Below are positions 13,972 to 48,852 of a stretch of 64,000 bases of DNA, one piece after another. A program made the translations under genes and the position numbers. The notes under the pieces were generated by a model that was given only the letters and a program-made list of their open reading frames with translations, was not told where the DNA came from and made no database searches. The stretch is from Malacoraja senta (Eukaryota), in assembly GCA_038087875.1 (NCBI GenBank), contig CM075977.1:229338001-229402000 (forward strand), read 5' to 3'. Every line of letters begins with the position of its first letter. Positions within the stretch are counted from its first letter, which is position 1.

Positions 13972-15095
13972 AAACATAGAAACATAGAAACATAGAAAAT
14001 AGGTGCAGGAGTAGGCCATTCGGCCCTTCGAGCCTGCACCGCCATTCAATATGATCATGGCTGATCATCCAACTCAGTATCCCGTACCTGCCTTCTCTCC
14101 ATACCCCCTGATCCCTTTAGCCACAAGGGCCACATCTAACTCCCTCTTAAATATAGCCAATGAACTGGCGTCAACTACCCTCTGTGGCAGAGAGTTCCAG
14201 AGATTCACCACTCTCTGTGTGAAAAAGTTTTTCCTCATCTCGGTCTTAAAGGATTTCCCCCTTATCCTTAAGCTGTGACCCCTTGTCCTGGACTTCCCCA
14301 ACATCGGGAACAATCTTCCTGCATCTAGCCTGTCCAACCCCATAAGAATTTTGTACGTTTCTATAAGATCCCCTCTCAATCTCCTAAATTCTAGCGAGTA
14401 TAAGCCAAGTCTATCCAGTCTTTCTTCATATGAAAGTCCTGACATCCCAGGAATCAGTCTGGTGAACCTTCTCTGCACTCCCTCTATGGCTATAATGTCC
14501 TTCCTCAGATTTGGAGACCAAAACTGTACGCAATACTCCAGGTGTGGTCTCACCAAGACCCTGTACAACTGCAGTAGAACCTCCCTGCTCCTATACTCAA
14601 ATCCTCTTGCTATGAAGGCCAACATACCATTCGCTTTCTTCACTGCCTGCTGCACCTGCATGCCTACTTTCAATGACTGGTGTACCATGACACCCAGGTC
14701 TCGCTGCACCTCCCCATTTCCTAATCGGCCACCATTTAGATAATAGTCTGCCTTCCCGTTTTTGCCACCAAAGTGGATAACCTCACATTTATCCACATTA
14801 TACTGCATCTGCCAAACATTTGCCCACTCCCCGAGCCTATCCAAGTCACCTTGCAGTCTCCTAGCATCCTCCTCACAGCTAACACTGCCCCCCAGCTTAG
14901 TGTCATCCGCAAACTTGGAGATGTTGCTTTCAATTCCCTCGTCCAGATCATTAATATAAATTGTAAATAGCTGGGGTCCCAGCACTGAGCCTTGCGGTAC
15001 CCCACTAGTCACTGCCTGCCATTGTGAAAAGGACCCGTTTACTCCTACTCTTTGCTTCCTGTTTGCCAGCCAGTTCTCTATCCACATCAATACTG
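13972..15095 (-). mobile_element. Young 5'-truncated CR1-type LINE, specific to unit B
   Basis: 338-aa uninterrupted RT C-terminus (SKFADDTK) and (ATAGAAAC)n tail. Empty site in unit C at about 30350 (tgtgagaaaggttg). Confidence 0.92.
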
Positions 15096-15669
15096 AAGGT
15101 TGAAACGGGTAGGGGTGTGCTCATTGTAACTTAAAATATAAGAGGTGATCACACTGAAACATAAAAATCCTGAGGGGGTTTGGCAGCTGTATGTTGGAAG
15201 GATGATCCAGCTTGTAGTAAAGTCTGGGACCAAAACACATCAACACAGAATAAGGTGCAGGCGTCATTTATGAATGAGACAAGGAAGAATATCTTCTCTC
15301 AAAAATTGGTGACTTATCTGAATTCCTTATCCCAGGAAAGGCTGAATCTTTGAATATATTCAAAGTGGAGACCAATTTATAATCAGTAAAAGAATCGAGT
15401 GCAATGGGACAGCGTGGGAGAGCAGATTTGGAATGTTGGATTAGCCATAGTTTTATTGAGCATGAGAGAGGCTCAAGTGCTGAATGGCCTGCTCCTGTTC
15501 CAATTTCCTATGGTTTCCATCACACTATTAACTTGTTTTCAGCTTCTTTTAAAAAAAATGTCTATTTTGATTTGATCTACAAATTGCAACATATCTGCTT
15601 ATTATTAATTTGACTATCTTGATGTAATCAGTGTTTTCTGTTGCACCAATGACTGGCCTTTGCAAATTC

Positions 15670-15705
15670 ATTATATTGAGCAACCCTAGTTATTCGGTAT
15701 ATAAA
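15670..15705 (+). promoter_or_regulatory. Gene B promoter: ATTGAGCAAC and TATAAA (15700-15705)
   Basis: Paralogous to the gene C promoter. Confidence 0.5.
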
Positions 15706-15780
15706 TGCAGGGGAAATAGAAGGCACCAAGAAAAACCAACTGAATCAGAAAGGCAAGGCTCGGGAAGACTGGAATCCGAC

Positions 15781-15843
15781 AGTTCTACAGTGTTAGTGTT
15801 ACACTCCTGCTGCTGTTTGCAATTGGTGCAGCTTTGCCTATGG
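15781..15843 (+). pseudogene. Gene B exon 1 with lost start codon (ATGAAC replaced by GTTC relative to gene C)
   Basis: Reads YSVSVTLLLLFAIGAALPM then G|gtgaga. There is an in-frame TGA upstream with no intervening ATG. The only in-frame ATG is at 15840-15842. Confidence 0.8.
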
Positions 15844-16312
15844 GTGAGAAAAATACCCTACATCTTGTCATTTATAGTCTTTAAGCTTTATAGCTGTAAT
15901 TAGATTTTTGATTAATTCAGCCAGTTGAATGAACTGTTGAAGACAGTTCACCGAATGTTCACTTGGATAATATTAGATATGGATTGTCTTATAATAAATG
16001 GTTGAAGCTGGTGGGTCTGTTCTCATTGTAACTTAAAAAATGAGCGGTGATCACACTGAAACATAGAATCCTGAGGGGGTTTGGCTGATTCTGATCCAAA
16101 GACAGTGTGTGTTTTCCAGGTTGTTCTATTTGATGTTCAGTCTTGCAGGTTACTATGTGTCCAGATGGAACTTGATGTGTCCTTCCTCGGTCTTAGAATA
16201 GGCCTTGTTATAACAGTGCAGAAGGCCCAAAAAGAGGCCACATTGTGAACACTGAAAGTAATAAAACAAATTTTAAGGAATACATTTTTACAACATGTCA
16301 TTTGTTTTACAG

Positions 16313-16445
16313 CAGCTCGTTTAAATATCAAAGAAGGAGCACATTGTAGGTGCAGTAAGTATGCAAAAAATTCCATGTCCAAGGATAATATTTATAAAAT
16401 TGAAATCTTCACCAGGAGCACAATGTGCAAATACACGGAAATCAT
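16313..16445 (+). CDS. Gene B exon 2: (A)ARLNIKEGAHCRCSKYAKNSMSKDNIYKIEIFTRSTMCKYTEI(I)
   Basis: ttttacag| and AT|gtaaga, 133 nt, Cys1, Cys2 and Cys3 intact. Confidence 0.88.
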
Positions 16446-16694
16446 GTAAGAATTATTCATACATTTAAATTTTCATGTTTATATTTCAATGGGTGGGATT
16501 CGTGATAATGTGGAGTAATTGTATGAATTACATTTTTATCTGCAGATCATCTGCCACATGTGAAAGGAACAAACAAGAGAACTCTGACAAACATTTTTTA
16601 ATTAAATGATGTTGCAATTTATCCCCCCCCCCCCGCACCTCCTCAAAAAAAATCTAATAACTAGAAAGATTAAATGTCTCCCTTTTTCTTTCAG

Positions 16695-16791
16695 AGCGCA
16701 TCAGATTTCACCACATGAGAAAGTTTGTTTGAAAGGGAAGACTTCCTGGGTGAAGATGCTTATTAATGAGTTACTTACCAAAACTGCATAG
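16695..16791 (+). CDS. Gene B exon 3: AHQISPHEKVCLKGKTSWVKMLINELLTKTA*
   Basis: tttctttcag| acceptor, Cys4 and Trp present. Stop TAG TAG where gene C has ATG CAG, so the protein is 5 aa shorter. Confidence 0.88.
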
Positions 16792-17077
16792 TAGGATACA
16801 TTTTGAAGGGCTTCATTGCCACAATGGTATCCTGAGGTGATGAAACAGGTTTTATACCTACAAATGTTTTTATGGTGAAGTGATTTTAATTCTAAATAAA
16901 ATGGATTGTATCTCTGATATGATTTAAGCATCAAATACATGGCATTCTAAAATGTATTTGTCTGTTCCTAAATATAATGCCAAATCTTCTATCTTCCCTT
17001 TCAGGGAACGTCTCCAATATTAAATCATAGAATGAGGTTCACAGCAGATCATTCAGCCCAAATGTCTTTGCTGGTTA

Positions 17078-18256
17078 AGAAGATTCAATTGTTGGGTATT
17101 AATGGTGGAGTAGCAAGATGGATTCAACAGTGGCTGAATGGGAGATGCCAGAGAGTAATTGTGGATGGCTGTTTGTCAGGTTGGAGGCCGGTGACTAGTG
17201 GGGTGCCTCAGGGGTCTGTGTTGGGTCCACTGTTGTTTGTCATGTACATCAATGATCTGGATGAAGGTGTGGAAAATTGGATTAGTAAGTATGCAGATGA
17301 TACTAAGATAGGTGGTGTTGTGGATAATGAAGTAGATTTTCAAAGTCTACAGAGAGATTTAGGCCATTTGGAAGGGTGGGCTGAAAGATGGCAGATGGAG
17401 TTTAATGCTGACAAATGTGAGGTGCTACATCTCGGCAGGACAAATCAAAATAGGACGTACACGGTAAATGGTAGCGAATTGAGGAATGCAGTTGAACAGA
17501 GGGATCTAGGAATAACTGTGCATAGTTCCCTGAAGGTGGAATCTCATGTAGATAGGGTGGTAAAGAAAGCTTTTGGTGTGCTGGCCTTTATAAATCAGAG
17601 CATTGAATATAGAAGTTGGGATGTAATGTTAAAATTGTACAAGGCATTGGTGAGGCCAATTCTGGAGTATGGAGTACAATTTTGGTCGCCTAATTATAGG
17701 AAGGATGTCAACAAAATAGAGAGAGTGCAGAGGAGATTTACTAGAATGTTGCCTGGGTTTCAGCAACTAAGTTACAGAGAAAGGTTGAACAAGTTAGGTC
17801 TTTATTCTTTGGAGCGCAGAAGGTTAAGAGGGGACTTGATAGAGGTCTTTAAAATTATGAGCGGGTTAGACAGAGTGGACGTGGATAAGCTTTTCCCATT
17901 GAGAGTAGGGAAGATTCAAACAAGGGGACATGACTTGAGAATTAAGGGACAGAAGTTTAGGGGGAACATTAGGGGGAACTTCTTTACTCAGAGAGTGGTA
18001 GCTGTGTGGAATGAGCTTCCAGTGGAAGTGGTGGAGGCAGGTTCGATGTTATCCTTTAAAAATAGATTGGATGGGTATATGGATGGGAAAGGAATGGAGG
18101 GTTATGGTCTGAGTGCAGGTAGATGGGACTAGGGGGAAGTATTTATTTTTAATTTTAAAAAAAATTTAAAAAAAAAATGTTTGGCACGGACTTGAAGGGC
18201 CGAGATGGCCTGTTTCCGTGCTGTTATGGTTATATGGTTATATGGTTATATGGTTA
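17078..18256 (+). mobile_element. Young 5'-truncated CR1-type LINE downstream of gene B
   Basis: Uninterrupted RT C-terminus to the stop at 18132 and (ATGGTTAT)n tail. TGGTTA occurs on both sides (17072-17077, 18251-18256). Empty site at 32329-32334. Confidence 0.93.
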
Positions 18257-19872
18257 TGTAAAAGTGATATTCAAGTACTCTCACCTCTAGCTCTTCAACT
18301 CCCAACCACCACCAAAACTCCACCACCATTTCAGGTATTCTCAAAGCCATGCAAATTTCTCTGCTTTGAAAGTTCTTCCAACTAACTATTTATTGATAGT
18401 TACCATTAAATCTGCTTCCACTGCCTTTTCAGAGAAACTCCAGATTAACAGCTCTTTTCCTTGTGTTTCTTCTGCAAATTTCTCCACATCAGTGCCCTCA
18501 AGTCAATGATGCTTTTGCCACGAGCAACATTTCCATCATATTCTCCATTTTATATTTCATGATATACTGGATATTGGATATACAGTATGCTCCAAACCTC
18601 ACCTTCACTCCACCTATGCCCTGTTAAATAATCCAAGCTTCTCCATTTTCTCAATAAAATAGAGATTCCAAAAACATGGCTTCGTTCTTGTAAATCAACT
18701 TTGTGGGACTTTGATTTTGGACGTAATTTGGTGCCAAGAACTGGAAGGATTACATCAGCGAGAAACCTATGAAAGGATTATCATAGTCCCTTGCTTTTTT
18801 TATTCTGTGATGAGATGGACAAAGAGCTGAATCCCTGTTTCCTTTTTTTAATGGCAGTCATTGGCACATCAGGATGGAGGTGATTGAGCTTTCCTGATCT
18901 GATGACATTGTAAATCCAGGGGCACAGTAGTATACCCGACTCCGCTTTTTCCAGACACATCTTTCCAGCCACTGCTCCATTCTTTTCAGGGTCTCTATTA
19001 TTCTGTCATTCACCTTTTCTCTGTCGGTAACACAAGGAACATTAAATTAGAGTAACCAGAGTAATGTGGATAAATGGTCTTTAGTTTAAGAGCATACTTC
19101 ATATTATTTTAAACTATAAGCAGCATGGTACAGCAAGAAATGTGTCTGTCGAGAGCTTGCTATATTATATGTATCAGAAATTGTGTGCGTTCAACTTTTG
19201 TTAATAAACTGCTTTGAATCCAATAATCGTATCCTGGTCATCATTTTAAAGAGACACAGGGAGAATGATACGGAACACCAAAGCTAAGTTAAGTCAATTA
19301 GATTTATAGAACACACAAACAGGCTGAATGAGTCTGAAGATGGGTCTTGACCCGAAACATCACCTATTCTTTTCTCCAGAATTGCTGCCTGACCCAATGC
19401 ATTTTGCAACTCCAGCATTTTGTATCTATGTTCGACAGAAACAGGCAAATCAGCATACCATGTCCATGATATCCAGTACTCATCTATATTAATGCCATTT
19501 ACTAGTACTTTGTCTGTGACCTTCTATGCATTGGCAATACAAGTGCTTATCCAGAAGCTTCTATAATGTTGTGAGAAACCTATCCACGCCACCCACTGTG
19601 GTAAAATGTGTTAAACATTTGTAACATCTTCTGCGTGACTATGATTTTCCTCAGTTTTGTTCCAACCGCTTATCTCTTACTCACAATTTACTCTATCATC
19701 CCCTCCACAAGTCCAAGGTAGTGCAAGAAGTGGTCTTTAGTGTTCTGTTGCCGAGGTAGGATTAGATTTGTTCAGGTCAGTTCAAGAACCTGACGATGTA
19801 AGAGAGTATCTATTCCTGAACCTGGTGGTGCGGGACTTCAGGCTTCTGGACCTCCTGCCTGACAGTAGCAGC

Positions 19873-29218: not shown

Positions 29219-30918
29219 AGAGTATTTTAAGTGGCTTTTGGATAGGCACATGGATATACAGGAAGTGGGGGGATGCAGATTATGTACAGGCACCATCCTA
29301 AATTCCAAAGGATACCCATGAATCGAGTGGTACATAAAGGCTGGCACTGCCAATGACACTCATGCAACATGCTTCAACAGGACAAATGTCTGACAGGAAG
29401 TACACAGGACTACATTTTATGAAAGCATCTTCTCAATGTGCATCCACAGACTGTGTGTGATGCTTGAGGAAGCAATCAATATACGGATCAGTCTGCAATG
29501 ATGAAATGTAGATCCCACCAATGGATCTCAACAGTGGAACCAAAACAGCTCACACATTTCAGCCCAAATAGAAAATACATCAGATTTTCCCCATAAATGT
29601 TACTTAGAGGGATCACACAATCCACAGTAACGTACATGATCGTTTATTTTAAGATCTGTTTTAGTTGCACTAAGGACATGAGTGTTTTTTATTTTGCACT
29701 AGAATTGTAGTTATAAACTTATTTATTATATATTATCAATGTGTATTGTGTTTAAGGTCTGTTATGCTGCTGCGAGTATGTATTTCATTGTTCCATCGTT
29801 GGTTCTTTAGGATCACTGAATTCTCAATGATTTGCTGAGTCCAGTGGAAGCGTTTAAAACTTTTTGTTCAGGCACAATGGACATACGGCATCAGAGCAAA
29901 GCATTAAAATATCTTAACTCAAAATTGAACGTTTCATAACTAACAGAACAAAACACTATGGAATTAGTACATAAAGACTAAAGACTGAACATGACTTTTA
30001 TGGATACACTGAACATAGAGTGATGAGGATGTATCAAGCACCTCGCACCATTAAAGGATCATTGTTCACAGTTCTGTCCAGACTCCTGTCAGTTGTAACC
30101 TTAATCTCACAAACTGTTTCTGGACACCGCATTGAGCCAAACTGCTCGCATACTACTAAATGCAGTAGACGAGGTTTGTGGAGGCGCATATGGACCTCTC
30201 TCTCACCTGGACGGGCTGCTGTGGTTCCTGGAGGGAAGTGAGAGAGGAGATGTAGGGACATGTGTTATGTGATCCTGTTATTTAAGGAACAATAGATAAT
30301 TATTAGAGACAGTTCACAGAATGTTCACTTGGATATGGATTGTCTTGTGTGAGAAAGGTTGAAACGGGTGGGGCGGTACTCATTGTAACTTAAAAAATAA
30401 GAGGTGATCCCACTGAAACATAAAAATCCTGAGGGGGTTTGGCAGCCAGGTGTTGGAAGGATGATCCTGCTTGTAGTAAAGTCTGGGACCAAAACACATC
30501 AATGCAGAATAAGGAGGAGTCTTTTATGAATGAGACAAGGAAGAATATCTTCTCTCAAAAATCGGTGACATTTGAATTCCTTATCCCAGGAAAGGCTGAA
30601 TCTTTGAATATATTCAAAGTGGAGAAAAAATTATAATCAGTGAAAGAATCGAGTGTAATGGGACAGGGTGGGAGAGCAGATTTGGAACGTTGGATTAGCC
30701 ATAGTTTTATTAAGCATGAGAGAGGCTCAAATGGTGAATGGCCTGCTCCTGCTCCAATTTCCTATGGTCTCCATGACATCATTAAAAAAATTTCAGCTCC
30801 TTTTAAAAAAAAATGTCTATTTTGATATGATCTACAAATTGCAACATATCTGCTTATTATCAATTTGACTATCTTGATGTAATCAGCGTTTTCTGTTGCG
30901 CCTTTGCAAATTCATTAT

Positions 30919-30949
30919 ATTGCGCAACCCTATTTATTCGGAATATAAA
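30919..30949 (+). promoter_or_regulatory. Gene C promoter: near-palindromic C/EBP site ATTGCGCAAC (30919-30928) and TATAAA (30944-30949)
   Basis: 9/10 match to the ATTGCGCAAT consensus, 15 nt before the TATA box. Confidence 0.6.
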
Positions 30950-31030
30950 TGCAGAGGAAATAGAAGGCACCAAGAAAAACCAACTGAATCAGAAAGGCAA
31001 GGCAAGGCTCGGGAAGACTGGAATCCGACA

Positions 31031-31094
31031 ATGAACTACAGTGTTAGTGTTACACTCCTGCTGCTGCTTGGAATTTGTGCAGCTTTGTCTATGG
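31031..31094 (+). CDS. CXC chemokine-like gene C, exon 1 (MNYSVSVTLLLLLGICAALSM)
   Basis: ATG, hydrophobic core, 64 nt, G|gtgaga donor. Confidence 0.9.
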
Positions 31095-31569
31095 GTGAGA
31101 AAAATACCCTACATCTTGTCATTTATAGTCTTAAGCTTTATAATTGTTGTTAGATTTTTGATTAATTCAGCCAGTTGAATGAACTATGGAAGACAGTTCA
31201 CCGAATGTTCACTTGGATAATATTAGATATGGATTGTCTTATAATAAATGGTTGAAGCGGGTGGGTCTGTACTCATTTAAAACCACACACCTAAAAATGA
31301 GCGGTAATCACACTGAAACATAGAATCCTGAGGGGGTTTGGCAGGTTCTGATTCAAAGACAGTGTGTGTTTTCCAGGTTGTTCTATTTGATGTTCAGTCT
31401 TGCAGGTTACTATGTGTCCAGATGGAACTTGATGTGTCCTTCCTTGGTCTTAGAATAGGCCTTGTTATAACAGTGCAGAAGGCCAAAGAAGAGGCCACAT
31501 TGTGAACACTTAAAGTCATAAAACTAATTTTAAGGAATATATGTTTACAACATGTCATTTGTTTTACAG

Positions 31570-31702
31570 CGGCTCATTTAAATATCAATGAAGGAGCACA
31601 ATGTATGTGCAGCACATATGAAACAAATTCCACGTCCGTGGTTGATATTTATAAAATTGAAATCTTCATGGCGAACGAAAAGTGCAACTACACGGAAATC
31701 AT
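31570..31702 (+). CDS. Gene C exon 2: (A)AHLNINEGAQCMCSTYETNSTSVVDIYKIEIFMANEKCNYTEI(I)
   Basis: ttttacag| and AT|gtaaga, 133 nt, CMC and Cys3 present. Confidence 0.92.
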
Positions 31703-31951
31703 GTAAGAATTGTTCATGCATTTAAATTTTCATGCTTATATTTCAATGGGTGGGATTCGTGATAATGTGGAGCAATTGTATTAATTACATTTTTATCTGC
31801 AGATCATCTGCCACATGTGAAAGGAACAAACAAGAGAACTCTGACAAACATTTTTTAATTAAATGATGTTGCAATTTATCCCCCCCCCCCCCCACCTCCT
31901 CAAAAAAAATCTAATAACTAGAAAGATTAAATGTCTCCCTTTTTCTTTCAG

Positions 31952-32063
31952 AGCTCATCAGATTTCACCACCTGAGAAAGTTTGTTTGAGTGGGAAGACT
32001 TCCTGGGTGAAGACGCTTATTATTGACTTACTTAACAAAACTGCAATGCAGGATACATTTTGA
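31952..32063 (+). CDS. Gene C exon 3: AHQISPPEKVCLSGKTSWVKTLIIDLLNKTAMQDTF*
   Basis: tttctttcag| acceptor, Cys4, TGA stop, AATAAA at about 32150. Confidence 0.92.
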
Positions 32064-33692
32064 AGGGCTTCATTGCCACAATGGTATCCTGAGGTGATGA
32101 AACAGGTTTTATACCTACACATGTTTGTATGGTGGTGATTTTAATTCTAAATAAAAAGGATTGTATCTCTGATATGATTTAATCATCAAATACATGACAT
32201 TCTAAAATGTATTTGTCTTTTCCTAAATATAATGCCAAATCATGTATCTCTTCCCTATAAGGGAAAGTCTCCAATATTAAATCATAGAATGAGGTTCACA
32301 GCAGATTATTCAGCACAAATGTCGTTGCTGGTTATGTAAAAGTGATATTCAAGTACTCTCACCTATAGCTCTTCAACTCCCAACCACCACCAAAACTCAC
32401 CACCATTTCAGGTATTTTCAAAGCCATGCAAATTTCTCTGCTTAAAAGTTCTTCCAACTAACCCTTTATTGAAAGTTACCATTAAATCTGCTCCACTGCC
32501 TTTTCAGAGAAACTCCAGATTAACAGCTCTTTTCCTTGTGTTTCTTTTGCAAATTTCTCCACATCCGTGCCCTCTAGTCAATGATGCTTTTGCCATGAGC
32601 ACACTTTCATCTTCTCCATTTTATATTTCATGATATACTGGATATTGGATATACAGTATGCTTCAAACCTCACCTTCACTCCACCTCTGCCCTGTTAAAT
32701 AATCCAAGCTTCTCCATTTTCTCAATAAAATAGAGATTCCAAAAACATGGCTTTATTCTTGTAAATCAGCTTTGTGGGACTTTGATTTTGTTCGTAATTT
32801 GGTGCCATGAACTGGAAGGATTACATCAGCTAGAAACCTATGAAAGATTTATCATGGTTCCTTGCTTTTTTTAATTCTATGATGAGATGGGCAAACTGCA
32901 GAATCCCTGTTTCCTTTTTTAATGGCAGTCATTGGCACATCAGGATGGAGGTGATTGAGCTTTCCTGATCTAATGACATTGTAAATCCAGGGGCACAGTA
33001 CTATACCCAACTCCGGTTTTTCCAGACACATCTTTCCAGCCACTGCTCCATTCTTTTCAGGGTCTCTATTACTTTGGCATTCACCTTTTCTCTGTCGGTA
33101 ACACAAGGAACATTAAATTAGAGTAACCAGAGTAATGTGGATAAATGGTCTTTAGTTTAAGAGCATACTTCATATTATTTTAAGCTATAAGCAGCATGGT
33201 ACAGCAAGAAATGTGTCTGTCGAGAGCTTGCTATATTATATGTATGAAAAATTGTGTGCGTTCAAGTTTTGCTAATAAACTGCTTTGAATCCAATAATCG
33301 TATCCTGGTCATCATTTTAAAGAGACACAGGGAGAATGATACGGAACACCAAAGCTAAGTTAAGTCAATTAGATTTATAGAACACACAAACAGGCTGACT
33401 GAGTCTGAAGATGGGTCTTGACCCGAAACATCACCTATTTCTTTTCTCCAGAATTGCTGCCTGACCCAATGCATTTTGCAACTCCAGCATTTTGTATCTA
33501 TGTTCGACAGAAACAGGCAAATCAGCATACCATGTCCATGATATCCAGTACTCATCTATATTAATGCCATTTACTAGTACTTTGTCTGTGACCTTCTATG
33601 CATTGGCAATACAAGTGCTCATCCAGAAGCTACTATAATGTTGTGAGAAACCTATCCACGCCATCCAGTGTGGTAAAATGTGTTAAACATTT

Positions 33693-34161
33693 AATAATAA
33701 TAATAATTCATTTTATTTACTGGCGCCTTTCTAAACCCAAGTACACCTTACAAGGCATAGAATCACAAAAATACAAAACACATAATCGGAATAAATTAAA
33801 TATAAAAACACCACAGTACACAAATCAAGGACAGAATTCAATTTCAAAAGCACAAAAAGAAAATAAGAAACACAATTTGAGGAGAGAGCAGCTGCGACCA
33901 ATTCGCGCCAGCGTCCACTCTCCCCTCCGACCGCCATCTTGCACACAGACTAACAGGCACAGCACACAAAAATCATCCCCCCACAATGACCACCACTGTG
34001 GGGAAGGCACAATGTCCAGTCCCCAGCCCCAGTTCTCCCCAGAGTCAGGCCCAATGAGGCCTCCACAGTTGCCTCTACGGAGGCCCGATGTTCCTGGCCG
34101 TCGGGAGAGTCCTCGCAGTGGCTGGAACGGCTGGAGTCGATGGCACCTGAAGCCGACAGGT
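33693..34161 (-). mobile_element. L2-tailed SINE or 5'-truncated L2, specific to unit C
   Basis: Reverse strand ends tgtaaggtgtacttgggtttagaaaggcgccagtaaataaaatgaattattattatt. Empty site in unit B at about 19620 (aaacattt|gtaacatc). Confidence 0.65.
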
Positions 34162-34468
34162 GTAACATCTTCTGCGTGACTACGCTTTTCCTCAGCTTTG
34201 CTGTAACCGCTTACCTCTTACTCACAATTTACTCTATTTATCCCCTGCACAAGTCCAAGGTAGTGCAAGAAGTAGTCTTTAGTGTTCTGTTGCAGAGGTA
34301 GGATTAGATTTGTTCAGGTTAGTTCAAGAATGTGACGATGTAAGAGAGTAACTATTCCTGAACCTGGTGGTGCGGGACTTCAGGCTTCTGGACCTCCTGC
34401 CTGACAGTAGCAGCAATAAGAGGGCATGGCCGAGATGGCCTGGATCCTTGATATTAGGCAACACCTGA

Positions 34469-34668
34469 NNNNNNNNNNNNNNNNNNNNNNNNNNNNNNNN
34501 NNNNNNNNNNNNNNNNNNNNNNNNNNNNNNNNNNNNNNNNNNNNNNNNNNNNNNNNNNNNNNNNNNNNNNNNNNNNNNNNNNNNNNNNNNNNNNNNNNNN
34601 NNNNNNNNNNNNNNNNNNNNNNNNNNNNNNNNNNNNNNNNNNNNNNNNNNNNNNNNNNNNNNNNNNNN
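34469..34668. other. Assembly gap, 200 N
   Basis: Run of N with a round fixed length. Confidence 0.99.
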
Positions 34669-35548
34669 ACACCTGCCATAAGTCAGAATGAACTTATTTC
34701 ACACATTTCACTGTACCAATTGGTACATGACAAATAAATGTATCTTGAATGAAAGGACATAGGGTGACATCTTACAATATTTAAACAATAAATATAGTGA
34801 GGAGCAGCAGAAAACTACAAAGCAGAAAACAGATGTGTGGGTAGTTAACTTCCCAATGAGAAATAGCGTAAGTTCTGAGTTATCGAGGCACTAAAGAACT
34901 CATCAACAAATGACTGAAAACTTTAAGTCCATTCAAAACTAACCTTTTGAATAAAGGCATTGTCTACTGTAACTTAAAACTATCCCTAACCTTTTCCAAA
35001 TCCCTCACCTATTGTGCAAGGTTTGTTGATCTGAGTTAGATATTAAAGTTCATCTCAAAACTTTACTCAGAGATATAATTTTATAGCATATTCACAATTC
35101 TAACGGACAAGATCATCTGAATTAATGTTCAGCTACTACACACCATGTTACATACGACGCCTTATTGATGCCACTGAGTTTCATAGAACCTACACACCAT
35201 CTGACAAATCCTTCTTTGCAGTGGTCTCATCTGCACAAGGAAAGTCACACGACCAGCCCTTGCATGGCCATTAATGTTAACATTAAAGTCATCATCTCAC
35301 TCTCACATTCTGCGCACCCCAATGTACAGCAGTTTTCCAAGGCTAGAGTTAGTTGGAAGGTACTTTGTGACAATAGACAATAGACAATAGACAATAGGTG
35401 CAGGAGTAGGCCATTCGGCCCTACGAGCCAGCACCCTCCCCATTCAATGTGATCATGGCTGATCATCCACAATCAGTACCCCGTTCCTGCCTTCTCCCCA
35501 TATCCCCTGACTCTGCTGTTTTTAAGAGCCCTATCTAGCTCTCTCTTG

Positions 35549-36854
35549 CAAGAGCGGAACTCACTATCAAAACATGGAGGGGATGGGGGACACAATTTTT
35601 TGGCGGCTCAACTGCTTGTCTCACCGGGTTAACTACAGCCCTGCCTGGACCTGACGGGACACCAGCACTGCTTCTCCGCGCTGGCCATATTTCCCGCAAG
35701 TCCATCCATCCCTGAAGGTGGAACCTCATGTAGATAGGGTGGTAAAGAAAGCTGGCCTTTATAAATCAGAGCATTGGATATACAAGTTGGGATGTCATGT
35801 TAAAATTGTACATGGCATTGGTGAGGCCAATTCTGGAGTATGGTGTACAATTTTGGTCGCCTAATTATAGGAAGGATGTCAACAAAATAGAGAGAGTACA
35901 GAGGAGATTTACTAGAATGTTGCCTGGGTTTCAGCAACTAAGTTACAGAGAAAGGTTGAACAAGTTAGGTCTTTATTCTTTGGAGCGCAGAAGGTTAAGA
36001 GGGGACTTGATAGAGGTCTTTAAAAGATGAGCGGGTTAGACAGAGTGGACGTGGATAAGCTTTTTCCATTGAGAGTAGGGAAGATTCAAACAAGGGGACA
36101 TGACTTGAGAATTAAGGGACAGAAGTTTAGGGGTAACATTAGGGGGAACTTCTTTACTCAGAGAGTGGTAGCTGTGTGGAATGGGCTTCCAGTGGAAGTG
36201 GTGGAGGCAGGTTCGATTTTATCCTTTAAAAATAGATTGGATGGGTATATGGACGAGAAAGGAATGGAGGGTTATGGTCTGAGTGCAGGTAGATGGGACT
36301 AGGGGGAAGTTTTTTTTGTTGTTTTTTTTTAAATTAAAAAAAAATGTTCGGCACGGTCTTGAAGGGCCGAGATGGCCTGTTTCTATGCTGTAACGGTTAT
36401 ATGGTTATATGGTTATATGGTTGTACGTTCACCTGGCGGGACAGGCTGAGTTGAGCTGGGTTTAGTGCTGTTTCTCTGCGCTGGCTGTGGGCCTGGGGGC
36501 ACAGCTCGTGTCTGACTCCCGACGTCTCTGGCCACCCGTGGGGGGGGAGGGGCACTCGGGACAGCGCCGGAGACACGGCCGGGATCGATCCTGGCTGTGG
36601 ATGAGGCGCAGGTCTGTGCCACGTCTCCCTCCTCCAACCACCGCGCTCTATCCTCAGTCCCACCTCCCCCCCACCCCCCACTCCTCCCTCCGCCAATCAT
36701 CGCGCCCTCGATCATCAGTCCCACCCCCACTGTCTCGCGGAAAGCGGATATTTTAAAATACGGATCACAAAAACTTGGGGGGGTTGTCCCCCACCTCTCA
36801 AAACATGGGGGGGACGTGTCCCCTCTGCCCCCCCCCCCGGGTTTTCTGCCCCTG
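35549..36854. mobile_element. Second hAT-type non-autonomous element, related to 19873-20610
   Basis: CAAGAGCGGAA...TTCTGCCCCTG ends and 8-bp TSD ctctcttg / ctctctta. Internal similarity to 20070-20560. Confidence 0.78.
35709..36421 (+). mobile_element. 5'-truncated CR1, same young family as 17078-18256, nested in the hAT element
   Basis: Near-identical to 17528-18256, including the (ATGGTTAT)n tail. Confidence 0.9.
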
Positions 36855-40158: not shown

Positions 40159-40222
40159 ATGAAGAACAAACAAATGCTGAAGCCTTTTGCAGCAATTCTG
40201 CTTTTCACAATTCTTGCAGCAG
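40159..40222 (+). CDS. Gene D putative exon 1 (MKNKQMLKPFAAILLFTILAA)
   Basis: ATG, basic n-region and hydrophobic h-region, exactly 64 nt, G|gtgtgt phase-1 donor. Joining to 52203 gives an A-D-A cleavage-type motif. The pairing across 12 kb is inferred. Confidence 0.65.
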
Positions 40223-43200
40223 GTGTGTTGTTTAATTATTACATTTTTCATTGTGCAATGTGATGAGTAAATATTTCCTGTTTTCTTAGCAATAGAAACC
40301 TCAAAAGTACAAAAACAAAAACATATTGAAGACATTTTCTTCCTAAATAATGAGAAACAACAACAATGAGTTGATTGTTTGTGGAGACATTGGTACAAGC
40401 ATGTGCAGAAATCATTGATTAGACTAGTTGTGAATTGATTTGTAGACTGTACTACTACTAGAGAGGCACAGTGGTGCAGCTGGTAGAGCTGCTGCCTCAC
40501 AACACCAGGTTCGATCCTGACCTTGGGTGCTGTCTGTGTGGTGTTTGCATGTTCTTTCTGTGATCGCTCGGATTTCCTCTCGGTGTTCTGGTTTTCCCCC
40601 ACATTCCAAAGACGTGCGGGTTTGTATGTTAATTTGCCTCTGTAAATTGTCCCTAATGTGTAGAGAGTGGATGAGAAAGTGGGATAACATAAAACTTGTG
40701 ATAGTCGATATATCGATAGTCAGCATGGACTCGGAAGGCTGAAGGGCCTGTTTCCATGCTATATCGTCTGCTCATGCAGTCTCTTTGCAGATGAATATGA
40801 TCACCTCAGCATGCAGCGGTCCCATTGATTTATGAATGATAACATTGTTCTTGCTGTGTATTCCATGGCCATGAATGTGCATCTTTGGCATATCTTGGCT
40901 TTTTAAAATAAAAGTTACTAATTATGTAATTCCTCACAAACTTGAGCAACCACTTGAAATGAGTTTCTGTGACAGAGGTTTCAGTTTCTACTCACCATAA
41001 ATTAACTACAGATTACCATTAGTTCCAGTGTCAATCTGTAACACATGAACCTAAAGAAAGGGAATATTACCACCTCATCAATTGAGGGGCTAGGATTCTT
41101 TATCTCCATTTAGTTATTTAAGCAAAGTGTCATAACAGGTCCTAAAGCATTCCATATTGATATCCATACCCAAGCAGATAGGCCACTGTTATATTGGGCC
41201 TCCTTGAGGATTAATTAAGACTTTTTGAAATAAATAAAACAAAAAATCAACTAAAAAACTCAATGAAAAGATTAAAAATTCAAGTAAAATGCAATTGTTG
41301 AATATAAATGTATAAATAAATGGTCAGATTCACAAAAAATGATTACAAATTTTAAAATCACATATAAAGCAAATTTAATAATGAAGTTCTGTTTCTTAAA
41401 ACTACTACATTTCAAATACTCCAAAATACATTATTTCATGATTTAATTCAAATTGTAAAATAATTTATATAATTTTTCAGAGCTCTGCTATCACCACATT
41501 ATTTTAGATGGGATAAACCAGATTACCACAAATCCGTCAGCTTAGATAATGTTTTGGTCCCTTTGTTTGTGATGAATGTTTATGGCATGTTGGTGTCACT
41601 GGGAAAGCCAGCACTCATCTGCCAGAAGTTACAGAGATCTGTGAAAGAGAGTGATTGAGCAACTACTGTTCACATTCTATGTCCATTTAGATATCAAGTA
41701 AAATCTCCACATTCGTACTTGCTACATTGCTATGTAGCAATGTTGGTTGTGATGAGGGTGCAGGGGCTTCAGGAAAACAGGCAAGAACTGATTGTGGCAA
41801 CATGTACATTTGTACACTTTGGTAGAAAAAATTGAAAGCCAGTCTTTTTAAGTAATTAAAGATTGAATGACGTGATAGAGGAATCTGAGTGACCATTTAC
41901 ATGAATTACTAAAAGATAGCATGCAGGCACAACATGTATTGAGTTATGTTGGCTTTTATTGCAAGAGGATTAGAGTACAAAAATACAAATGGCTTAAAAC
42001 AATTATCTAGGCTTACTCAGGCCACACTTAAAATATTGTGTACAAGCCTGCCTAATTTAGGAAGGGTAGATTCGCCATACAGAAAATGCAACAAAGGTTC
42101 ACCAGGCTGATTCTAATGAGAGAGGTTGTGTTGTACGAGGTTTGATGAAACAGATTGGGACCAGGCTCTCTTACATCAATCTCTTAGATTAATGAGAATA
42201 AGAGATGATCTCACTGATACATATGAAATCTTTATGAGACTTGACAGGATATATTTAGGGATTGTTTCCCTTGACTGGGGAGGCTAAAACCAAGGTTTGA
42301 TCATTCAGGTATCAGATGACAAAAAAATCACCCAGAATATAATAACCGTTAGGAATTCTCTATCCAAGGAATCTGTGGAAGAGAGTCACAGAGAGCAATA
42401 GATGTCTAGATATTAAGGGAATGAGGTTGGTACAAGAAAACAATGTTGAGGGGAAAGAACAGCAATGACCTTAACGAACAACAGGGGCACAAGTGTACGT
42501 AAGGCCGACTCCAGTTTCTTTTTCCTATGTTCTTAACATTTTAATAAACATTTTCTCTTTCAGAGGATCTTTAAATGGTTTTACTCATGGGTCATATAGA
42601 GCAATTTACCATTTGTAACGAAGACTTGAATAAAGTTATTATTTTCTGAATAAACCGAGGTATATTATTTTGCACAGTGACACCTGCTATGTGGTAGATA
42701 GTTCTGATATCTGTAATAAATGTTGCAAACACTAATTTCTCATTAAACTACGCTGATGAGGTCTGGGCATTCAGGGATGGTGTTTACAATCATCTAGAAT
42801 TCTGCTCACCTGATTTTCCTTTCCCATTGTCTGTTCTTGCCAGCCACTGCCAACCCCAGCGCACCAATATCCTTTTATTAAAGATCATCGATCCTTTGTA
42901 TTTTGCTCTTATTAGCAATAGGTTGAGAACATGCAGTTGATGAGCATAACTGTCTCTTCTTTTTTTTTAAATATTATTATTTTATTAGAAGTACAATCGT
43001 ATGGCACCAAAGTGCCTAATATATATTTTCATAATACATTTTATGTACAGCTTCTTATATTTTTTATTATAATAAAGAAGAATAAGAAAAAGAAATTAGA
43101 TAATAAAGTATAGAAAAATGTGAGATATATAGTGTGTGAAGAAGAAGAAAAAAGAATGAAAGGAGAAAGTTAAAGAAAAGAAAATGTGGAAAAGAGAGTA

Positions 43201-44658
43201 AATTTTTTTTAAAAAGTAAGGAGATCATTATTTATAATCTTGACCATCCCCCACCCAGTCCCGAGACAGTTAGCTTTTACAATTGTGTTGCACCATATGA
43301 TTCCAAAAAGACGACAAATGGAGACCAACTCGTTATGAATTGGTCTGATTTATCTATTAGGAGGAATCGCATTTCCTCAAGATGTGCAGTGTCCAACATG
43401 CTTGCAATCCACATTTTGAGCGTTGGTATTGGTGTATTTTTCCAAAATTTAAATATTAATTTTTTTGCTATTATTAAACCATAATTATAAAATAAATTTT
43501 GAGATGAATTCAATTTATTCCCATTTTCCATTACTCCAAATATAATCAATTCAGTATTAGGTTCCATTCTTATCTTAAATAATTTTGTAAATATTTCAAA
43601 AATATCACTCCAAAATCTATAAAGTTTTATGCAGGAAACAAAAGAGTGTGTTATAGTTACGTTTTGGGATAAACACTTATCGCAAATGGGGGATATATTT
43701 GGATAGAATTTATTCAATCTTGTTTTTGAATAATATAATCTATGTAAAATTTTAAATTGAATTAAATTATGTCTTGCATTAATCGAACATTTGTGAATGT
43801 ATATCAAATACTTTTCCCATGTAACCTTCGTAATTTTTATCGTTAATTCCCGTTCCCACTCTTCTCTAAGTACCTCTGTCGATGGTAGGTCTATATTTAA
43901 AATACTATTATATAAATATGATATAAATTTTTGTGAGTCAGCTTTAATATTCATTGCTTCTTCCAATAAGTCAGGAGTTATTTTTTGATATCCTTGTATG
44001 TATTTCTTCATGAAATCGCAAATCTGAAGATATTTAAAATAATGGTTGTTTTTCAATTTAAATTTTAATTGTAATTGTTGGAATGATAATAAATTTCCCA
44101 TTTCATATATATCCCCGATCCTTTTAATCCCTAAACTTTCCCATTGATTATATGTTTTATCAATAAGAGATGGTTTAAATAAAGGATTATTCGTTATTGG
44201 CATTAACAATGATAGGTTTCTTAATTTTAAGGATAATTTTATTTGTTTCCATATTCTTATTGTATCATGTATAATTGGGTTCTTTTTATATATTGTATTG
44301 TTCCATTTTTTCGGGGAGAAGAGGATCGTTCCTATATTACAAGGAAAACAATCCTCTTTCTCCATTTTTATCCATTCTGTCTGTTGGGTAGAACTGTCCA
44401 ACCAATAAATTATATTCTCAATATGCACTGCCCAATAATAATACAAAAAATTCGGGAGTGAAAGTCCCCCGACATCTTTTGGTTTACATAAAAGGCCTGT
44501 CTCACGAGTCTGCGGTCATTGGCGGCGAAACAGGAACTATCTACCGCTCCTGGGCCGCCAGAGACCGCGGGCTCGGTCAAACGCACAATTCCAGGGCCGT
44601 GCGGCGTTGTTCCCAACACCGCACGGTGCTAAATAAAAACCAACACTGTCCAAAAATA

Positions 44659-47600
44659 CAGTGGCTTGCAAAAGTATTCATACCCCTTGAACTTTTCCAC
44701 ATTTTGTCACGTTACAACCACAAACGTAAATGTATTTTATTGGGATTTTATGTGATAGACCAACACAAAGTGGTGCATAATTGTGAAGTGGAAGGAAAAT
44801 GATACATGGTTTTCAAATTTTTTTACAAATCAAAAACTGAAAAGTGTGGCGTGCAAAAGTATTCAGCCCCTCTGAGTCAATACTTTATAGAACCACCTTT
44901 CGCTGCAATTACAGCTGCAAGTCTTTTGGGGTATGTCTCTACCAGCTTTGCACATCTAGAGACTGACATTTTTGCCCATTCTTCTTTGCAAAATAGCTCA
45001 AGCTCAGTCAGATTGGATGGAGAGCGTCTGTGAACAGCAATTTTCAAGTCTTGCCAGAGATTCTCAATTGGATTTAGGTCTGGACTTTGACTGGGCCATT
45101 CTAACACATGAATATGCTTTGATCTAAACCATTCCATTGTAGCTCTGGCTGTATGTTTAGGGTCGTTGTCCTGCTGGAAGGTGAACCTCCGCTCCAGTCT
45201 CAAGTCTTTTGCAGACTCTAACAGGTTTTCTTCCAAGATCGCCCTGTATTTGGCTCCATCCATCTTCCCATCAACTCTGACCAGCTTCTCAGAAAATAAT
45301 AGCAAAAACATTAGCCAATAGATTAAGCAAGTATGTTAGTAGACTAATACATGAGGATCAAACAGGATTTATACCTAAGAGACACTCATTTAATAATTTG
45401 AGACGTTTGCTTAACATAATGCATTCACATAAATCTTATGACCAAGAGTTAGCTATCATCTCACTGGACGCAGAAAAAGCGTTTGATCAAGTAGAATGGG
45501 ACTATATGATCAAAGTATTGCAAAAATTCCAATTGGGAGAAAACTTTATTGCATGGATAAAACTACTATATAACAAACCTACGGCTAGAATACTAACTAA
45601 TAATATATTATCTTCAAAATTCGAATTATCTAGGGGCAACAGACAAGGATGTTCACTATCACCGCTGTTATTTGCTTTGGTAATTGAACCCCTTGCTGAA
45701 AAAATAAGAACACACTCGAATATTCACGGTTATAACACAAAATATTCAAACAACAAACTATCCCTATATGCTGATGATGTACTACTGTACATCACAAAAC
45801 CACAAATTAGTATACCAAATATATTAAACTTAATTGAGGACTTTGGATCCTTTTCAGGATATAGAATAAATTGGAACAAAAGTGAAATTATGTCGATTAA
45901 ACCAAAAGATTCAACACATCTCAGGAAATTCCCTTTTAAAATAGCTATGGAAAAATTCAAATATTTAGGAATTGAGATTACTAGAAATTACCATGATATG
46001 TTTAAAGCTAATTATAATCCCCTACTTAAGAAATTAAATAATCTGATTAAATTTTGGAAAACACTTCCGATGTCCTTAATAGGTAGGATAAATGCTATAA
46101 AAATGATTTTCTTACCACAAATCCTTTACCTATTTCAATCAATACCTATATATCTCCCAAAAAAGTTTTTCAAAAAACTGGACTCAGACATTACAAATTT
46201 TATATGGGATTACAAATCCCACAGAATACAAAGAACACACCTTAACAAACGAAAAGAGTTGGGGGGTCTAGCGCTCCCTAACTTTATGTATTATAACTGG
46301 GCAGTAAATATTAAAAATATGATTCACCTGCTGGACAATTCTGCCCAGCAGGTGGACTGGATTATAATGGAAAAAGGGGATTGCTCCCCGAATAATATAG
46401 GAGCGATTATTCTCTCTCCAATAAACTTGAATAATAAAAATTATAATAAAAATCCAATTATATATAGCACTATTAGAACATGGAAGCAAATAAAACAGAA
46501 TCTAAAATTAAGAAACCTATCTCTCTTAATACCAATAGTCAATAACCCATCGTTTAAACCTTCAATCATAGATAAAGCATTTATACAATGGGAAAGAATG
46601 GGAATTAAAACGCTCGAAGATCTGTATGAATTAGAAAAATTACTATCATTCCAACAACTACAACTGAAATATAATTTGAAAAATAATCAATATTTTAAAT
46701 ATATACAAATCTGTGACTATTTGAAAACACACACAAAAGATTATTATAATATGCCTTCCGACTTACTAGATGAAGCAATGAAGACAAAGGCGGAATCAGC
46801 TAATTTAATATCATACTTATATAATATCATCTTAAATATAGAAATACCCACAACAGATGGAATTAGAAGAGATTGGGAACAAGATCTAGGTATAAAAATT
46901 TCAAAAGAGAGTTGGGATAATCATTTATTACAGGTGCATAAATGCTCGATCAACGTACGACATACGCTTATCCAATTTAAAACATTACATAGATTATATT
47001 ATTCAAAAACCAAACTAAATAAAATCTTTCCTAACGTCTCACCAATCTGTGATAAATGTATATGTCAAGAAGCTACCATAGCACATTCTTTTGTTTTTTG
47101 TACAAAAATCCAAAAATTCTGGTTTGAAATATTTGATATTTTTTCAAAATTAATCAAAATAAAACTGGTACCAAAACCAGAATGGATTATTTTTGGAATA
47201 TCGGAAGGTATTCCTGAATTAAACGTGTATCAGAAGAATTTACTCAATTATGGGCTAATAATGGGAAAAAAGCTTATACTTAAATTCTGGAAAAATGCGC
47301 CCACACCAACAATAAAAATGTGGACATCAAATATGTTGGAAACATTACATCTGGAAGAGATGAGATTCCTCCTAGTAGGCAAAGCAGATCAATTTCAAAA
47401 GACGTGGTCTACGTTTTTGGACCTATTACAAGCATGAGGTGCAATAGTAATTTAGAAAAACAAATAAATAAATAAAAGGTATCTGGACCTGGTAATGGGA
47501 GGTAAAATAAAAATAGACTTGGTTGGTAGTTCCTTCTCTATGAAGTATGGTATAAGAGTCATAATAGAGCGATTGTTCCTTCTTTCTTTCTCTTTTTTTT

Positions 47601-48852
47601 CTAGGGTCTATTTTCTAACTTTACTTCCTTCTCTAACCTCTTTTCTAAGGGGCTTTCTTTTCCCAACACTCTTTTGCACTTCACAACCTTTGCGCACTTT
47701 CTTCACTTTTCTTACTTCTTTCTTTTTCTTTCTTAAAGTTTAAAAAAGTGAAGCGGTACAAAAAATGTATTAATATATACGTGTTGTACATTACTGTAAT
47801 CTACCGTACTTCTAAAAAATAAAAAATATTAAAAAAAAAAATAAAAAAAAACTCTGACCAGCTTCCCTGTCCCTGCTGAAGAAAAGCATCCCCACAGCAT
47901 GATGCTGCCACCACCATGTTTCACAGTGGGGATGGTGTGTTCAGGGTGATGTGCAGTGTTAGTTTCCGCCACAAATAGCGTTTTGCATTTAGGCCCAAAA
48001 CTTCAATTTTGGTCTCATCTGCCCAGAGCACCATCCTCCACATGTTTGCTGTGTCCTCCACATGGCTTGTGGCAAACTGCAAACGGGACTTCTTATGGCG
48101 TTTTTTCCAACAATGGCTTTCTTGTTGCCACTCTTCCATAAAGGGCCGATTTGTGGAGTGCACGACTAATAGTTGTCCTGTGGACAGATTCTCCCACCTG
48201 AGCTGTGGATCTCTGCAGCTCCTCCAGAGTTACCATGGGCCTCTTGGCTGCTTCTCTGATCAATGCTCTCCTTGCCAGGCCTGTCAGTTTAGGTGGACGG
48301 CCATGTCTTGGTAGGTTTGCAGTTGTGCCATACTCTTTCCATTTTCGGATGATGGATTGAACAGTGCTCCGTGAGATGTTCAAAGCTTGGGATATTTTTT
48401 TATAACCTAACCCTGCTTTAAACTTCTCCACAACTTTATACCTGACCTGTCTGGTGTGTTCCTTGGGCTTCATGATGCTGTTTGTTCACTAATGTTCTCT
48501 AACAAACCTCTGAGGCCTTCACAGAACAGCTGTATTTATACTGAGATTAGATTACACACAAGTGGACTCTATTTACTAATTAGGTGACTTCTGAAGGCAA
48601 TTGGTTGCACTGGATTTTATTTAGGGGTATCAGAGTAAAGGGGGCTGAATACTTTTGCACGCCACACTTTTCAGTTTTTTATTTGTAAAAAAATTTGAAA
48701 ACCATGTATCATTTTCCTTCCACTTCACAATTATGCGCCACTTTGTGTTGGTCTATCACATAAAATCCCAATAAAATGCATTTACGTTTGTGGTTGTAAC
48801 GTGACAAAATGTGGAAAAGTTCAAGGGGTATGAATACTTTTGCAAGCCACTG
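44659..48852 (-). mobile_element. Tc1-family (DD34E) transposon with long IR/DR termini, split by an L1
   Basis: TA TSDs and about 212-bp TIRs starting CAGTGGCTTGCAAAAGTATTCA with an internal direct repeat. Paired-like HTH (48093-48473), WADETK, QQDNDPKH and SPDLNPIENLW motifs. Confidence 0.95.
45289..47850 (+). mobile_element. Inner 5'-truncated L1 with a 679-aa open ORF2 segment (45398-47437)
   Basis: Poly-A tail and 16-bp TSD AACTCTGACCAGCTTC (45273-45288, 47850-47865). RT and CxxC...H domains are uninterrupted. Confidence 0.95.

What the first reader, a model, noticed from the sequence alone, without database searches (positions are those of the whole stretch)
31031..32063. Gene C: charge-reversed chemokine with three N-glycosylation sequons
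Seen in sequence: after the signal exon, C has 6 K/R and 9 D/E (net -3), while B has 14 K/R and 6 D/E (net +8). C carries N-S-T, N-Y-T and N-K-T, and at each site B has a non-sequon (NSM, KYT, TKT). Established: most chemokines are basic and bind glycosaminoglycans through K/R patches. Inference: C may not be retained on GAGs and could act as a long-range, circulating or decoy ligand.
Basis: partly seen in the sequence, partly recalled or inferred. Interest (0 to 1): 0.7.

Follow-up and report, generated by a model that had tools for sequence, protein, structure and literature searches.

The report
Acidic, sequon-rich skate CXC chemokine
Gene C is an intact, young copy of a skate chemokine gene whose surface changed fast from strongly basic to acidic and gained three sugar-attachment sites, but its expression, glycosylation and loss of matrix binding remain untested.

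Summary
Gene C has three coding exons (31031-31094, 31570-31702, 31952-32063) and encodes a 102-aa CXC chemokine (Pfam IL8, four canonical Cys). The mature protein has 6 K/R and 9 D/E (pI 5.1) and three N-x-T sequons. Paralogue B has 14 K/R and 6 D/E (pI 9.6) and no sequon.

The contrast is not chance. Replacement divergence between B and C is about three times the non-coding divergence (P about 5e-6). No replacement falls in a beta-strand. K/R residues are replaced preferentially. Random drift from B never gave both features in 20,000 trials. None of the five other sequences compared (B and four A-type relatives) has a sequon, so the sequons look derived in C.

Three caveats apply:
- B, the "normal" comparator, has lost its start codon and is probably dead.
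- Acidity is not unique here: a Rhinoraja cluster relative has pI 5.3.
- Known acidic chemokines still bind glycosaminoglycans.

The cluster lies next to the J chain gene, as published in 2024. No B/C-type protein was found in the libraries searched. I read C as a new variant of a known kind, of moderate interest. The scan's other notes concern this same window, not other DNA.

The parts
30920..30927 (+). Perfect C/EBP core palindrome TTGCGCAA in C's promoter. The same site reads TTGAGCAA in B.
   Evidence: Motif scan and B/C alignment. A role in regulation is inference only.
30944..30949 (+). TATA box, 87 bp upstream of the ATG and conserved in B.
31031..31094 (+). Exon 1 coding part: start codon (A at -3) and signal peptide, followed by a phase-1 donor GTGAGA.
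   Evidence: It is 64 nt, the same length as exon 1 of gene A and of the J chain gene.
31570..31702 (+). Exon 2: mature N-terminus, the C-M-C motif, N-loop, strand 1, 30s loop and Cys3. It diverges 18% from B. It holds sequon 1 (31626-31634, NST) and sequon 2 (31686-31694, NYT).
31952..32063 (+). Exon 3: strands 2-3, Cys4, the W-V motif, the C-terminal helix, sequon 3 (32034-32042, NKT), a derived 5-aa tail (MQDTF) and the TGA stop.
32150..32155 (+). AATAAA polyadenylation signal, 87 nt after the stop.
15780..16791 (+). Paralogue B, the comparator. Its ATG is lost at 15780-15785. The exon 1 homologue runs to 15843, exon 2 is 16313-16445, and exon 3 is 16695-16791 ending in TAG. Splice sites, TATA box and poly(A) signal are intact.
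29776..36422 (.). The C-side copy of a segmental duplication. Its partner is 13405-19872, which holds B. Identity is 92-96%, and the B copy carries a repeat insertion at 13975-15095.

Best explanation
Gene C is an intact, recently duplicated CXC chemokine gene of a rajid skate. It lies in the CXCL8-like cluster just upstream of the J chain gene.

Shown: after the B/C duplication (about 5% neutral divergence), the exposed surface of the mature protein was rebuilt while the fold was kept. At least four ancestral basic residues were lost. Three N-x-T sequons arose, each through one amino-acid replacement (M22T, K40N, T73N). The stop moved, adding a 5-residue tail that contains Asp.

Inferred mechanism: the protein is secreted through its signal peptide and glycosylated at up to three sites. 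It folds with the two canonical disulfides. It has no basic cluster, and its glycans would sit on the N-loop, next to Cys3 in the 30s loop, and at the end of the C-terminal helix. It should therefore bind heparan sulfate weakly and diffuse rather than stay immobilised.

The sequon sites and most replacements lie on the parts of a chemokine that contact the receptor. Its receptor pharmacology has therefore probably changed too. The basic copy B lacks a start codon, so C is probably the only working gene of the B/C type in this genome.
For: - Family and fold: Pfam IL8 hit above cutoff. Best solved relatives are CXCL10 (E=0.002) and IL-8/CXCL6 (E=0.03). A model of the A-type relative P0004 matches IL-8, MIP-2, CXCL13 and IP-10 folds with target-normalised TM 0.76-0.89.
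- Selection: divergence from B is 18% in exon 2, 5.3% in intron 1 and 2.4% in intron 2. dN=0.170 and dS=0.109. There are 27.5 replacement changes where 9.8 are expected at the non-coding rate of 5.4%, P=4.7e-6.
- Fold kept: 0 of 23 replacements fall in the 17 non-Cys strand positions, 4 in the helix and 19 in loops and termini, P=0.0007. All four Cys are kept.
- Direction: 9 of B's 14 K/R are replaced against 14 of 57 other residues, P=0.009.
- Polarity: R13 and K19 are invariant in all four A-type proteins and in B. T22, N40 and N73 occur only in C. B's stop lies at the A-type position, four residues after the LL motif.
- Positions: the IL-8 alignment end points (C 12-73 to IL-8 7-67) put N20 at K15 (N-loop), N40 just after Cys3, and N73 at K67. 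K67 belongs to the core GAG-binding set K20/R60/K64/K67/R68 (PMC6095893).
- Gene integrity: ATG with A at -3, canonical splice sites, TATA box, C/EBP palindrome and AATAAA.
- B lacks an ATG.
Against: - No transcript evidence. Two runs hold 65% and 29% of the sampled words of 31031-32170, but their kind is only guessed. Exons plus UTR are only about 37% of that stretch, so the richer run holds intron sequence too.
- No orthologue of C was reached, so long-term conservation of the sequons is unknown.
- Sequon use is uncertain. From general knowledge of oligosaccharyltransferase, sites in very short proteins and near the C-terminus or cysteines are glycosylated less efficiently.
- Acidic CCL3 and CCL4 still bind GAGs (PMC7138053).
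- B also lacks a basic residue at the position aligned with the conserved K64 of IL-8, so this clade's GAG site need not match IL-8's.
- The outgroups are distant (30-47% identity). They polarise only a few sites, and identical-residue matches split 5 for B and 5 for C.
- Clustered multi-nucleotide changes (8 of 15 nt in the 30s loop) could come from gene conversion by a paralogue outside the window.
Confidence: 0.5

Rival explanations
1. Arms-race by-product. B/C-type chemokines are under diversifying selection on their receptor- and pathogen-facing loops, as many tandem chemokine paralogues are. The charge shift and sequons are side effects of that turnover. C remains an ordinary chemoattractant with no special diffusible or decoy role, and its sequons may be only partly used.
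For: Replacements concentrate in the N-terminus, N-loop and 30s loop: 17 of 23 fall in 30 positions, P=0.0003. Charge is labile across the cluster, with pI from 5.3 to 9.6 among A-type proteins of three species. K40N both removes a charge and makes a sequon. Reviews note that chemokine glycosylation often leaves in vitro activity unchanged (PMC5104965).
Against: Three sequons, all N-x-T, together with an 11-unit charge change never arose in 20,000 drift trials. No sequon occurs in the five other sequences compared.
Confidence: 0.25
2. C is not a working gene. It is unexpressed or decaying, and the exon differences come from gene conversion by an unseen paralogue or from changes on B's side.
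For: There is no RNA proof. No B/C-type protein is annotated or present in 1.84 billion representative proteins or in the word-indexed library. Both neighbours A and B are damaged. Differences are clustered.
Against: The reading frame, start context, splice sites, promoter elements and poly(A) signal are intact. All four Cys and every strand residue are kept while the surface changed. Replacement divergence is about three times the neutral rate, which decay cannot produce.
Confidence: 0.12
3. C has left, or is leaving, classical chemokine signalling. It acts as a soluble antagonist or decoy, a heterodimer partner of basic chemokines, or has a new non-chemotactic role, as its neighbour the J chain once acquired.
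For: The sequon at N40 directly follows Cys3, and N20 sits in the N-loop. These regions dock onto receptors in CXC chemokines (general knowledge). J chain arose from this same cluster, and its authors expected further examples of chemokines taking on new roles (PMC10801876).
Against: The canonical disulfide set, the W-V motif and the TEII Glu are all kept, unlike in J chain. There is no functional data.
Confidence: 0.13

Closest known systems
CXCL8-like 'cluster A' CXC chemokine genes next to jchain in cartilaginous fish (Kawasaki et al. 2024, PMC10801876)
   Same: C lies about 8 kb upstream of the J chain gene on the same strand. Exon 1 encodes the signal peptide, intron phases are 1 and 2, and the CXC motif is in exon 2. 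C has the W-V motif and the Glu of TEII.
   Different: There is no ELR motif: the residues before the first Cys read E-G-A-Q. The stop lies in the third exon, so there are three coding exons rather than four. The mature protein is acidic and carries three sequons.
Skate A-type proteins: XP_078268758.1 'interleukin-8-like' and a 'CXCL13-like' of Rhinoraja longicauda, and a 'CXCL13-like' of Leucoraja erinacea (P0001, P0003, P0004), plus gene A of this window
   Same: Same cluster, same three-coding-exon layout, 64-nt first exon and the same stop position as B. Exon 2 is 30-33% identical and exon 3 32-47% identical to C. The P0004 model has a chemokine fold.
   Different: They form a separate clade and none has a sequon. 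Their pI ranges from 5.3 to 9.6. No B/C-type protein was found in the libraries searched.
Human CXCL10 and CXCL8 (solved structures 1lv9, 1ikl, 4xdx)
   Same: These are the best sequence matches in the PDB (E=0.002 and 0.03-0.05). Cysteine spacing between CXC and Cys3 is the same, and C has one extra residue in the 40s turn.
   Different: Both are basic and lack sequons in the chemokine domain (my own knowledge). C has Asp where IL-8 has the conserved GAG anchor K64, and Asn where IL-8 has K67.
Acidic chemokines CCL3 and CCL4
   Same: Net acidic chemokines (PMC7138053).
   Different: They are CC class and keep a BBXB heparin motif in the 40s loop, so they still bind GAGs. C has no adjacent basic residues. 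CCL3 and CCL4 are not N-glycosylated (my own knowledge).
Immunoglobulin J chain, the neighbouring gene (40159-58521)
   Same: It descends from a CXC chemokine of this cluster and carries a conserved N-I-S sequon. Tetrapod J chains are acidic (PMC10801876).
   Different: J chain rewired its disulfides and gained a C-terminal extension. C keeps the chemokine disulfide set.

Membership tests
CXC chemokine (Pfam PF00048, IL8-like) | Profile match above the curated threshold | tested here: met
   31.9 bits against a 21.3 cutoff, E=1.6e-7, residues 32-89
CXC chemokine (Pfam PF00048, IL8-like) | Four cysteines in the order C-x-C ... C ... C at canonical spacing | tested here: met
   Mature C12, C14, C39 and C56. 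There are 24 residues between CXC and Cys3, as in IL-8.
CXC chemokine (Pfam PF00048, IL8-like) | Chemokine fold: N-loop, three strands and a C-terminal helix | tested here: inconclusive
The A-type relative P0004 folds as a chemokine (pLDDT 74-77 in the core, target-normalised TM 0.76-0.89 to IL-8, MIP-2, CXCL13 and IP-10). C aligns to it with all strand residues unchanged relative to B.
CXC chemokine (Pfam PF00048, IL8-like) | Basic mature protein with clusters of K/R for GAG binding | tested here: not met
   pI 5.14, net -3, six isolated Lys and no adjacent basic pair. This is typical of the family rather than defining: CCL3 and CCL4 are acidic members (PMC7138053).
JCHAIN-linked CXCL cluster gene structure (PMC10801876) | Signal/mature boundary at the exon 1-2 junction, intron phases 1-2-2, four exons, CXC in exon 2, linkage to jchain | tested here: inconclusive
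   Phases 1 and 2, CXC in exon 2 and linkage are met. There is no third intron: the stop is in exon 3. NCBI's CDS for the A-type protein P0001 likewise ends in its third coding exon.
CXCL8-like subgroup | ELR motif before CXC, conserved Glu, and W-V motif | tested here: not met
   The Glu (TEII) and W-V are present, but ELR is absent (E-G-A-Q-C).
N-glycoprotein | Sequons actually occupied by glycans | not testable with these tools
   Three N-x-T sequons, none with Pro at +1 or +3. Occupancy needs a PNGase F assay or mass spectrometry.
Expressed gene | Spliced transcripts | tested here: inconclusive
Pseudogene (applies to B, the comparator) | Loss of an element needed for translation | tested here: met
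   A 2-bp gap plus substitutions remove the ATG. There is an in-frame stop upstream, and the only in-frame ATG is the last codon of exon 1. Whether the loss is fixed in the species is unknown.

The most novel reading that the evidence does not exclude
C is a naturally GAG-blind, glycan-shielded CXC chemokine that no longer acts as a matrix-presented attractant. It would work as a circulating antagonist or decoy, or as a partner of basic chemokines. That would make it a second, independent case, beside J chain, of a chemokine from this same cluster being recruited to a new soluble role.
Probability: 0.13. Interest if true: 0.7.

Novelty: new variant of a known kind. Interest (0 to 1): 0.4.

Why it matters
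Chemokine gradients depend on basic surfaces that hold the protein on heparan sulfate. A natural paralogue that lost this charge and may carry three glycans would be a ready-made experiment on what GAG binding contributes in vivo. It sits in one of the oldest lineages with adaptive immunity. It also sits in the gene cluster that gave rise to the J chain, so it shows how quickly surface chemistry can be rebuilt there. If it is expressed and glycosylated, it would be, to my knowledge, an unusually glycan-rich member of a family whose N-glycosylation is little studied.

Tried and rejected
- Word-indexed protein search with spliced C found nothing.
- A profile of exon 2 from C, B and A against 1.84 billion representatives found only one A-type protein.
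After that I sent it to no remote tool, so C itself was not folded.
- PDB searches with single exons found nothing.
- I looked for a C orthologue through 10-kb flanks of A-type genes in Rhinoraja (L001, L003) and Leucoraja (L002). These hold only A-type copies and repeats.
- I also tried the upstream flank of the Amblyraja radiata J chain gene (L004). A 7-kb insertion there means the flank stops at the equivalent of window 37547, about 5.5 kb short of C.
- I rejected a haplotype or assembly duplicate as the origin of B and C. The copies differ by 5% in non-coding DNA and by a 1.1-kb repeat insertion.
- I rejected plain relaxed constraint, because replacement divergence exceeds the neutral rate.
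- The supplementary gene tables of PMC10801876 are not held.

Full report
**What is there.** The window is vertebrate DNA (about 40% GC, spliced genes). I rebuilt that gene with exons 40159-40222, 52203-52329, 56067-56147 and 58425-58521, giving 122 aa. Its protein is 95% identical to the Amblyraja radiata J chain and 86% identical to the Raja eglanteria J chain. DNA of Leucoraja erinacea and A. radiata is 92-94% identical to the window. The window therefore comes from another rajid skate.

**Gene model.** Gene C has three coding exons: 31031-31094, 31570-31702 and 31952-32063.
- Splice sites are canonical, with intron phases 1 and 2.
- A TATA box lies at 30944 and an AATAAA signal at 32150.
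- The 102-aa product matches Pfam IL8 above threshold.
- It carries C-M-C, two further cysteines at canonical spacing, the TEII glutamate and a W-V motif.
- Its best solved relatives are CXCL10 and IL-8.

Mature C has 6 K/R and 9 D/E (pI 5.14). Its sequons are NST, NYT and NKT at residues 20, 40 and 73. Mature B has 14 K/R and 6 D/E (pI 9.58), and reads NSM, KYT and TKT at those sites.

**Is it more than chance?** B and C lie in a segmental duplication, 13405-19872 against 29776-36422.
- Non-coding divergence within the gene module is 5.4% (90 of 1656 positions).
- Exon 2 differs by 18% and exon 3 by 9.8%. Introns 1 and 2 differ by 5.3% and 2.4%. This agrees with the scan's separate note on exon-versus-intron divergence.
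- dN is 0.170 and dS is 0.109.
- There are 27.5 replacement changes where 9.8 would be expected even if every replacement were neutral (P=4.7e-6).

Decay cannot give this. It needs positive selection, or conversion from another paralogue.

**Where the replacements fall.**
- The 23 replacements avoid all 17 non-Cys strand positions. Four lie in the helix and 19 in loops and termini (P=0.0007). Secondary structure comes from a model of the A-type relative P0004, carried over through the family alignment.
- The four helix replacements (66, 69, 70, 73) align with R60, E63, K64 and K67 of IL-8. I extrapolated this from the alignment end points (C 12-73 to IL-8 7-67). R60, K64 and K67 belong to IL-8's core GAG-binding set (PMC6095893).
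- Nine of B's 14 K/R are replaced, against 14 of 57 other residues (P=0.009).
- Random drift from B gave three or more sequons in 0.7% of trials, a net charge as low as C's in 0.5%, and both in none of 20,000.

**Which state is derived?** The only outgroups I could reach are A-type proteins: gene A of this window, two from Rhinoraja longicauda and one from Leucoraja erinacea.
- R13 and K19 are invariant in all four and in B. Positions 35 and 40 are mostly basic in them, and C has lost the basic residue at all four sites.
- T22, N40 and N73, which create the sequons, occur only in C.
- B's stop is at the A-type position, so C's MQDTF tail is derived.
- These outgroups are distant. Identical-residue matches split 5 to 5. 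B-specific lysines at 7, 16, 24 and 58 face acidic or neutral residues in the outgroups, so part of the gap may be gain on B's side or in the B/C ancestor.

1. B has no start codon. A 2-bp gap and substitutions remove the ATG, an in-frame stop lies upstream, and the only in-frame ATG is the last codon of exon 1. B also lost the C/EBP palindrome that C keeps. B is probably a recent pseudogene or null allele, not a working basic partner.
2. Gene A of this window has Tyr where its Leucoraja and Rhinoraja relatives have Cys3. C is therefore the only one of the three chemokine genes here with every canonical feature.
3. Acidity is not unique. The Rhinoraja 'interleukin-8-like' protein has pI 5.34 and its paralogue pI 6.46. 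The sequons are unique to C.
4. Acidic CCL3 and CCL4 still bind GAGs through a BBXB motif (PMC7138053). C has no adjacent basic residues, which favours weak binding, but this is inference.
5. Both B and C have an acidic residue where IL-8 has its conserved anchor K64. The GAG site of this clade need not match IL-8's.

**Mechanism.** Shown: an intact gene, a conserved fold core, and a surface remodelled faster than neutral, with directional loss of charge and gain of three N-x-T sites. Inferred: secretion, glycosylation, weak GAG retention, and altered receptor docking. By alignment, N20 lies in the N-loop and N40 directly after Cys3. From general knowledge, these are the regions that meet the receptor N-terminus and pocket. 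Also from general knowledge, small proteins and C-terminal sites are glycosylated less efficiently. C's five-residue tail moves N73 from 3 to 8 residues from the C-terminus, which may or may not matter. Reviews say the in vivo role of chemokine glycosylation is still unclear (PMC5104965).

**Comparison with what is known.** The cluster and its link to jchain were published in 2024 (PMC10801876). That paper places CXCL8-like genes next to jchain in cartilaginous fish. C fits this in position, intron phases and motifs, but it lacks ELR and a fourth exon. No B/C-type protein was found in the libraries searched, so this clade appears unannotated. I file C as a CXC chemokine and a new variant within that kind.

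**What could not be done.**
- There is no read-level evidence. One run search gave two runs of guessed kind holding 65% and 29% of the sampled words. The first figure exceeds the exonic share of about 37%, so it cannot be pure mRNA.
- No orthologue of C was reached.

Noticed in passing
window 15780-15785: Paralogue B has lost its initiator ATG through a 2-bp gap plus substitutions relative to C, while its splice sites, TATA box and poly(A) signal are intact. It looks like a very recent pseudogene or null allele.
   Followed up: partly
window 9825-9827: Gene A (exons 3761-3824, 9712-9844, 10084-10186) has TAC (Tyr) where its Leucoraja and Rhinoraja relatives have Cys3. That leaves three cysteines in the mature protein.
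   Followed up: partly
window 1-2910 and 10491-13403: A second segmental duplication, 95.5% identical, flanks gene A. The cluster is built from repeated modules.
   Followed up: no
window 13975-15095; L001 at many sites: A repeat element of about 0.6-1.1 kb is inserted in the B copy of the duplication. It recurs many times in the Rhinoraja, Leucoraja and Amblyraja loci and mimics synteny in BLAST tables.
   Followed up: no
L004 and L005 (Amblyraja radiata, downstream of jchain); window 57072-60110 and 62185-63226: The module holding the J chain terminal exon is tandemly repeated at least eight times in A. radiata. It appears about twice in this window.
   Followed up: no
L004 2410-9486: A. radiata has a 7-kb insertion just upstream of jchain that is absent from the window.
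   Followed up: no
L002 15839-15898 and 21392-21851: Leucoraja erinacea carries extra A-type exons, one copy inverted, next to the annotated 'CXCL13-like' gene. Copy number and orientation of the cluster differ between skate genera.
   Followed up: no
P0001, P0003 (Rhinoraja longicauda): These A-type proteins have five cysteines in the mature part and near-neutral to acidic pI (5.3 and 6.5). Charge is labile across this cluster.
   Followed up: partly
window 31611-31637: C's N-loop reads S-T-Y-E-T-N-S-T-S, with six Ser/Thr in nine residues, three of them new relative to B. It could also be a mucin-type O-glycosylation patch.
   Followed up: no
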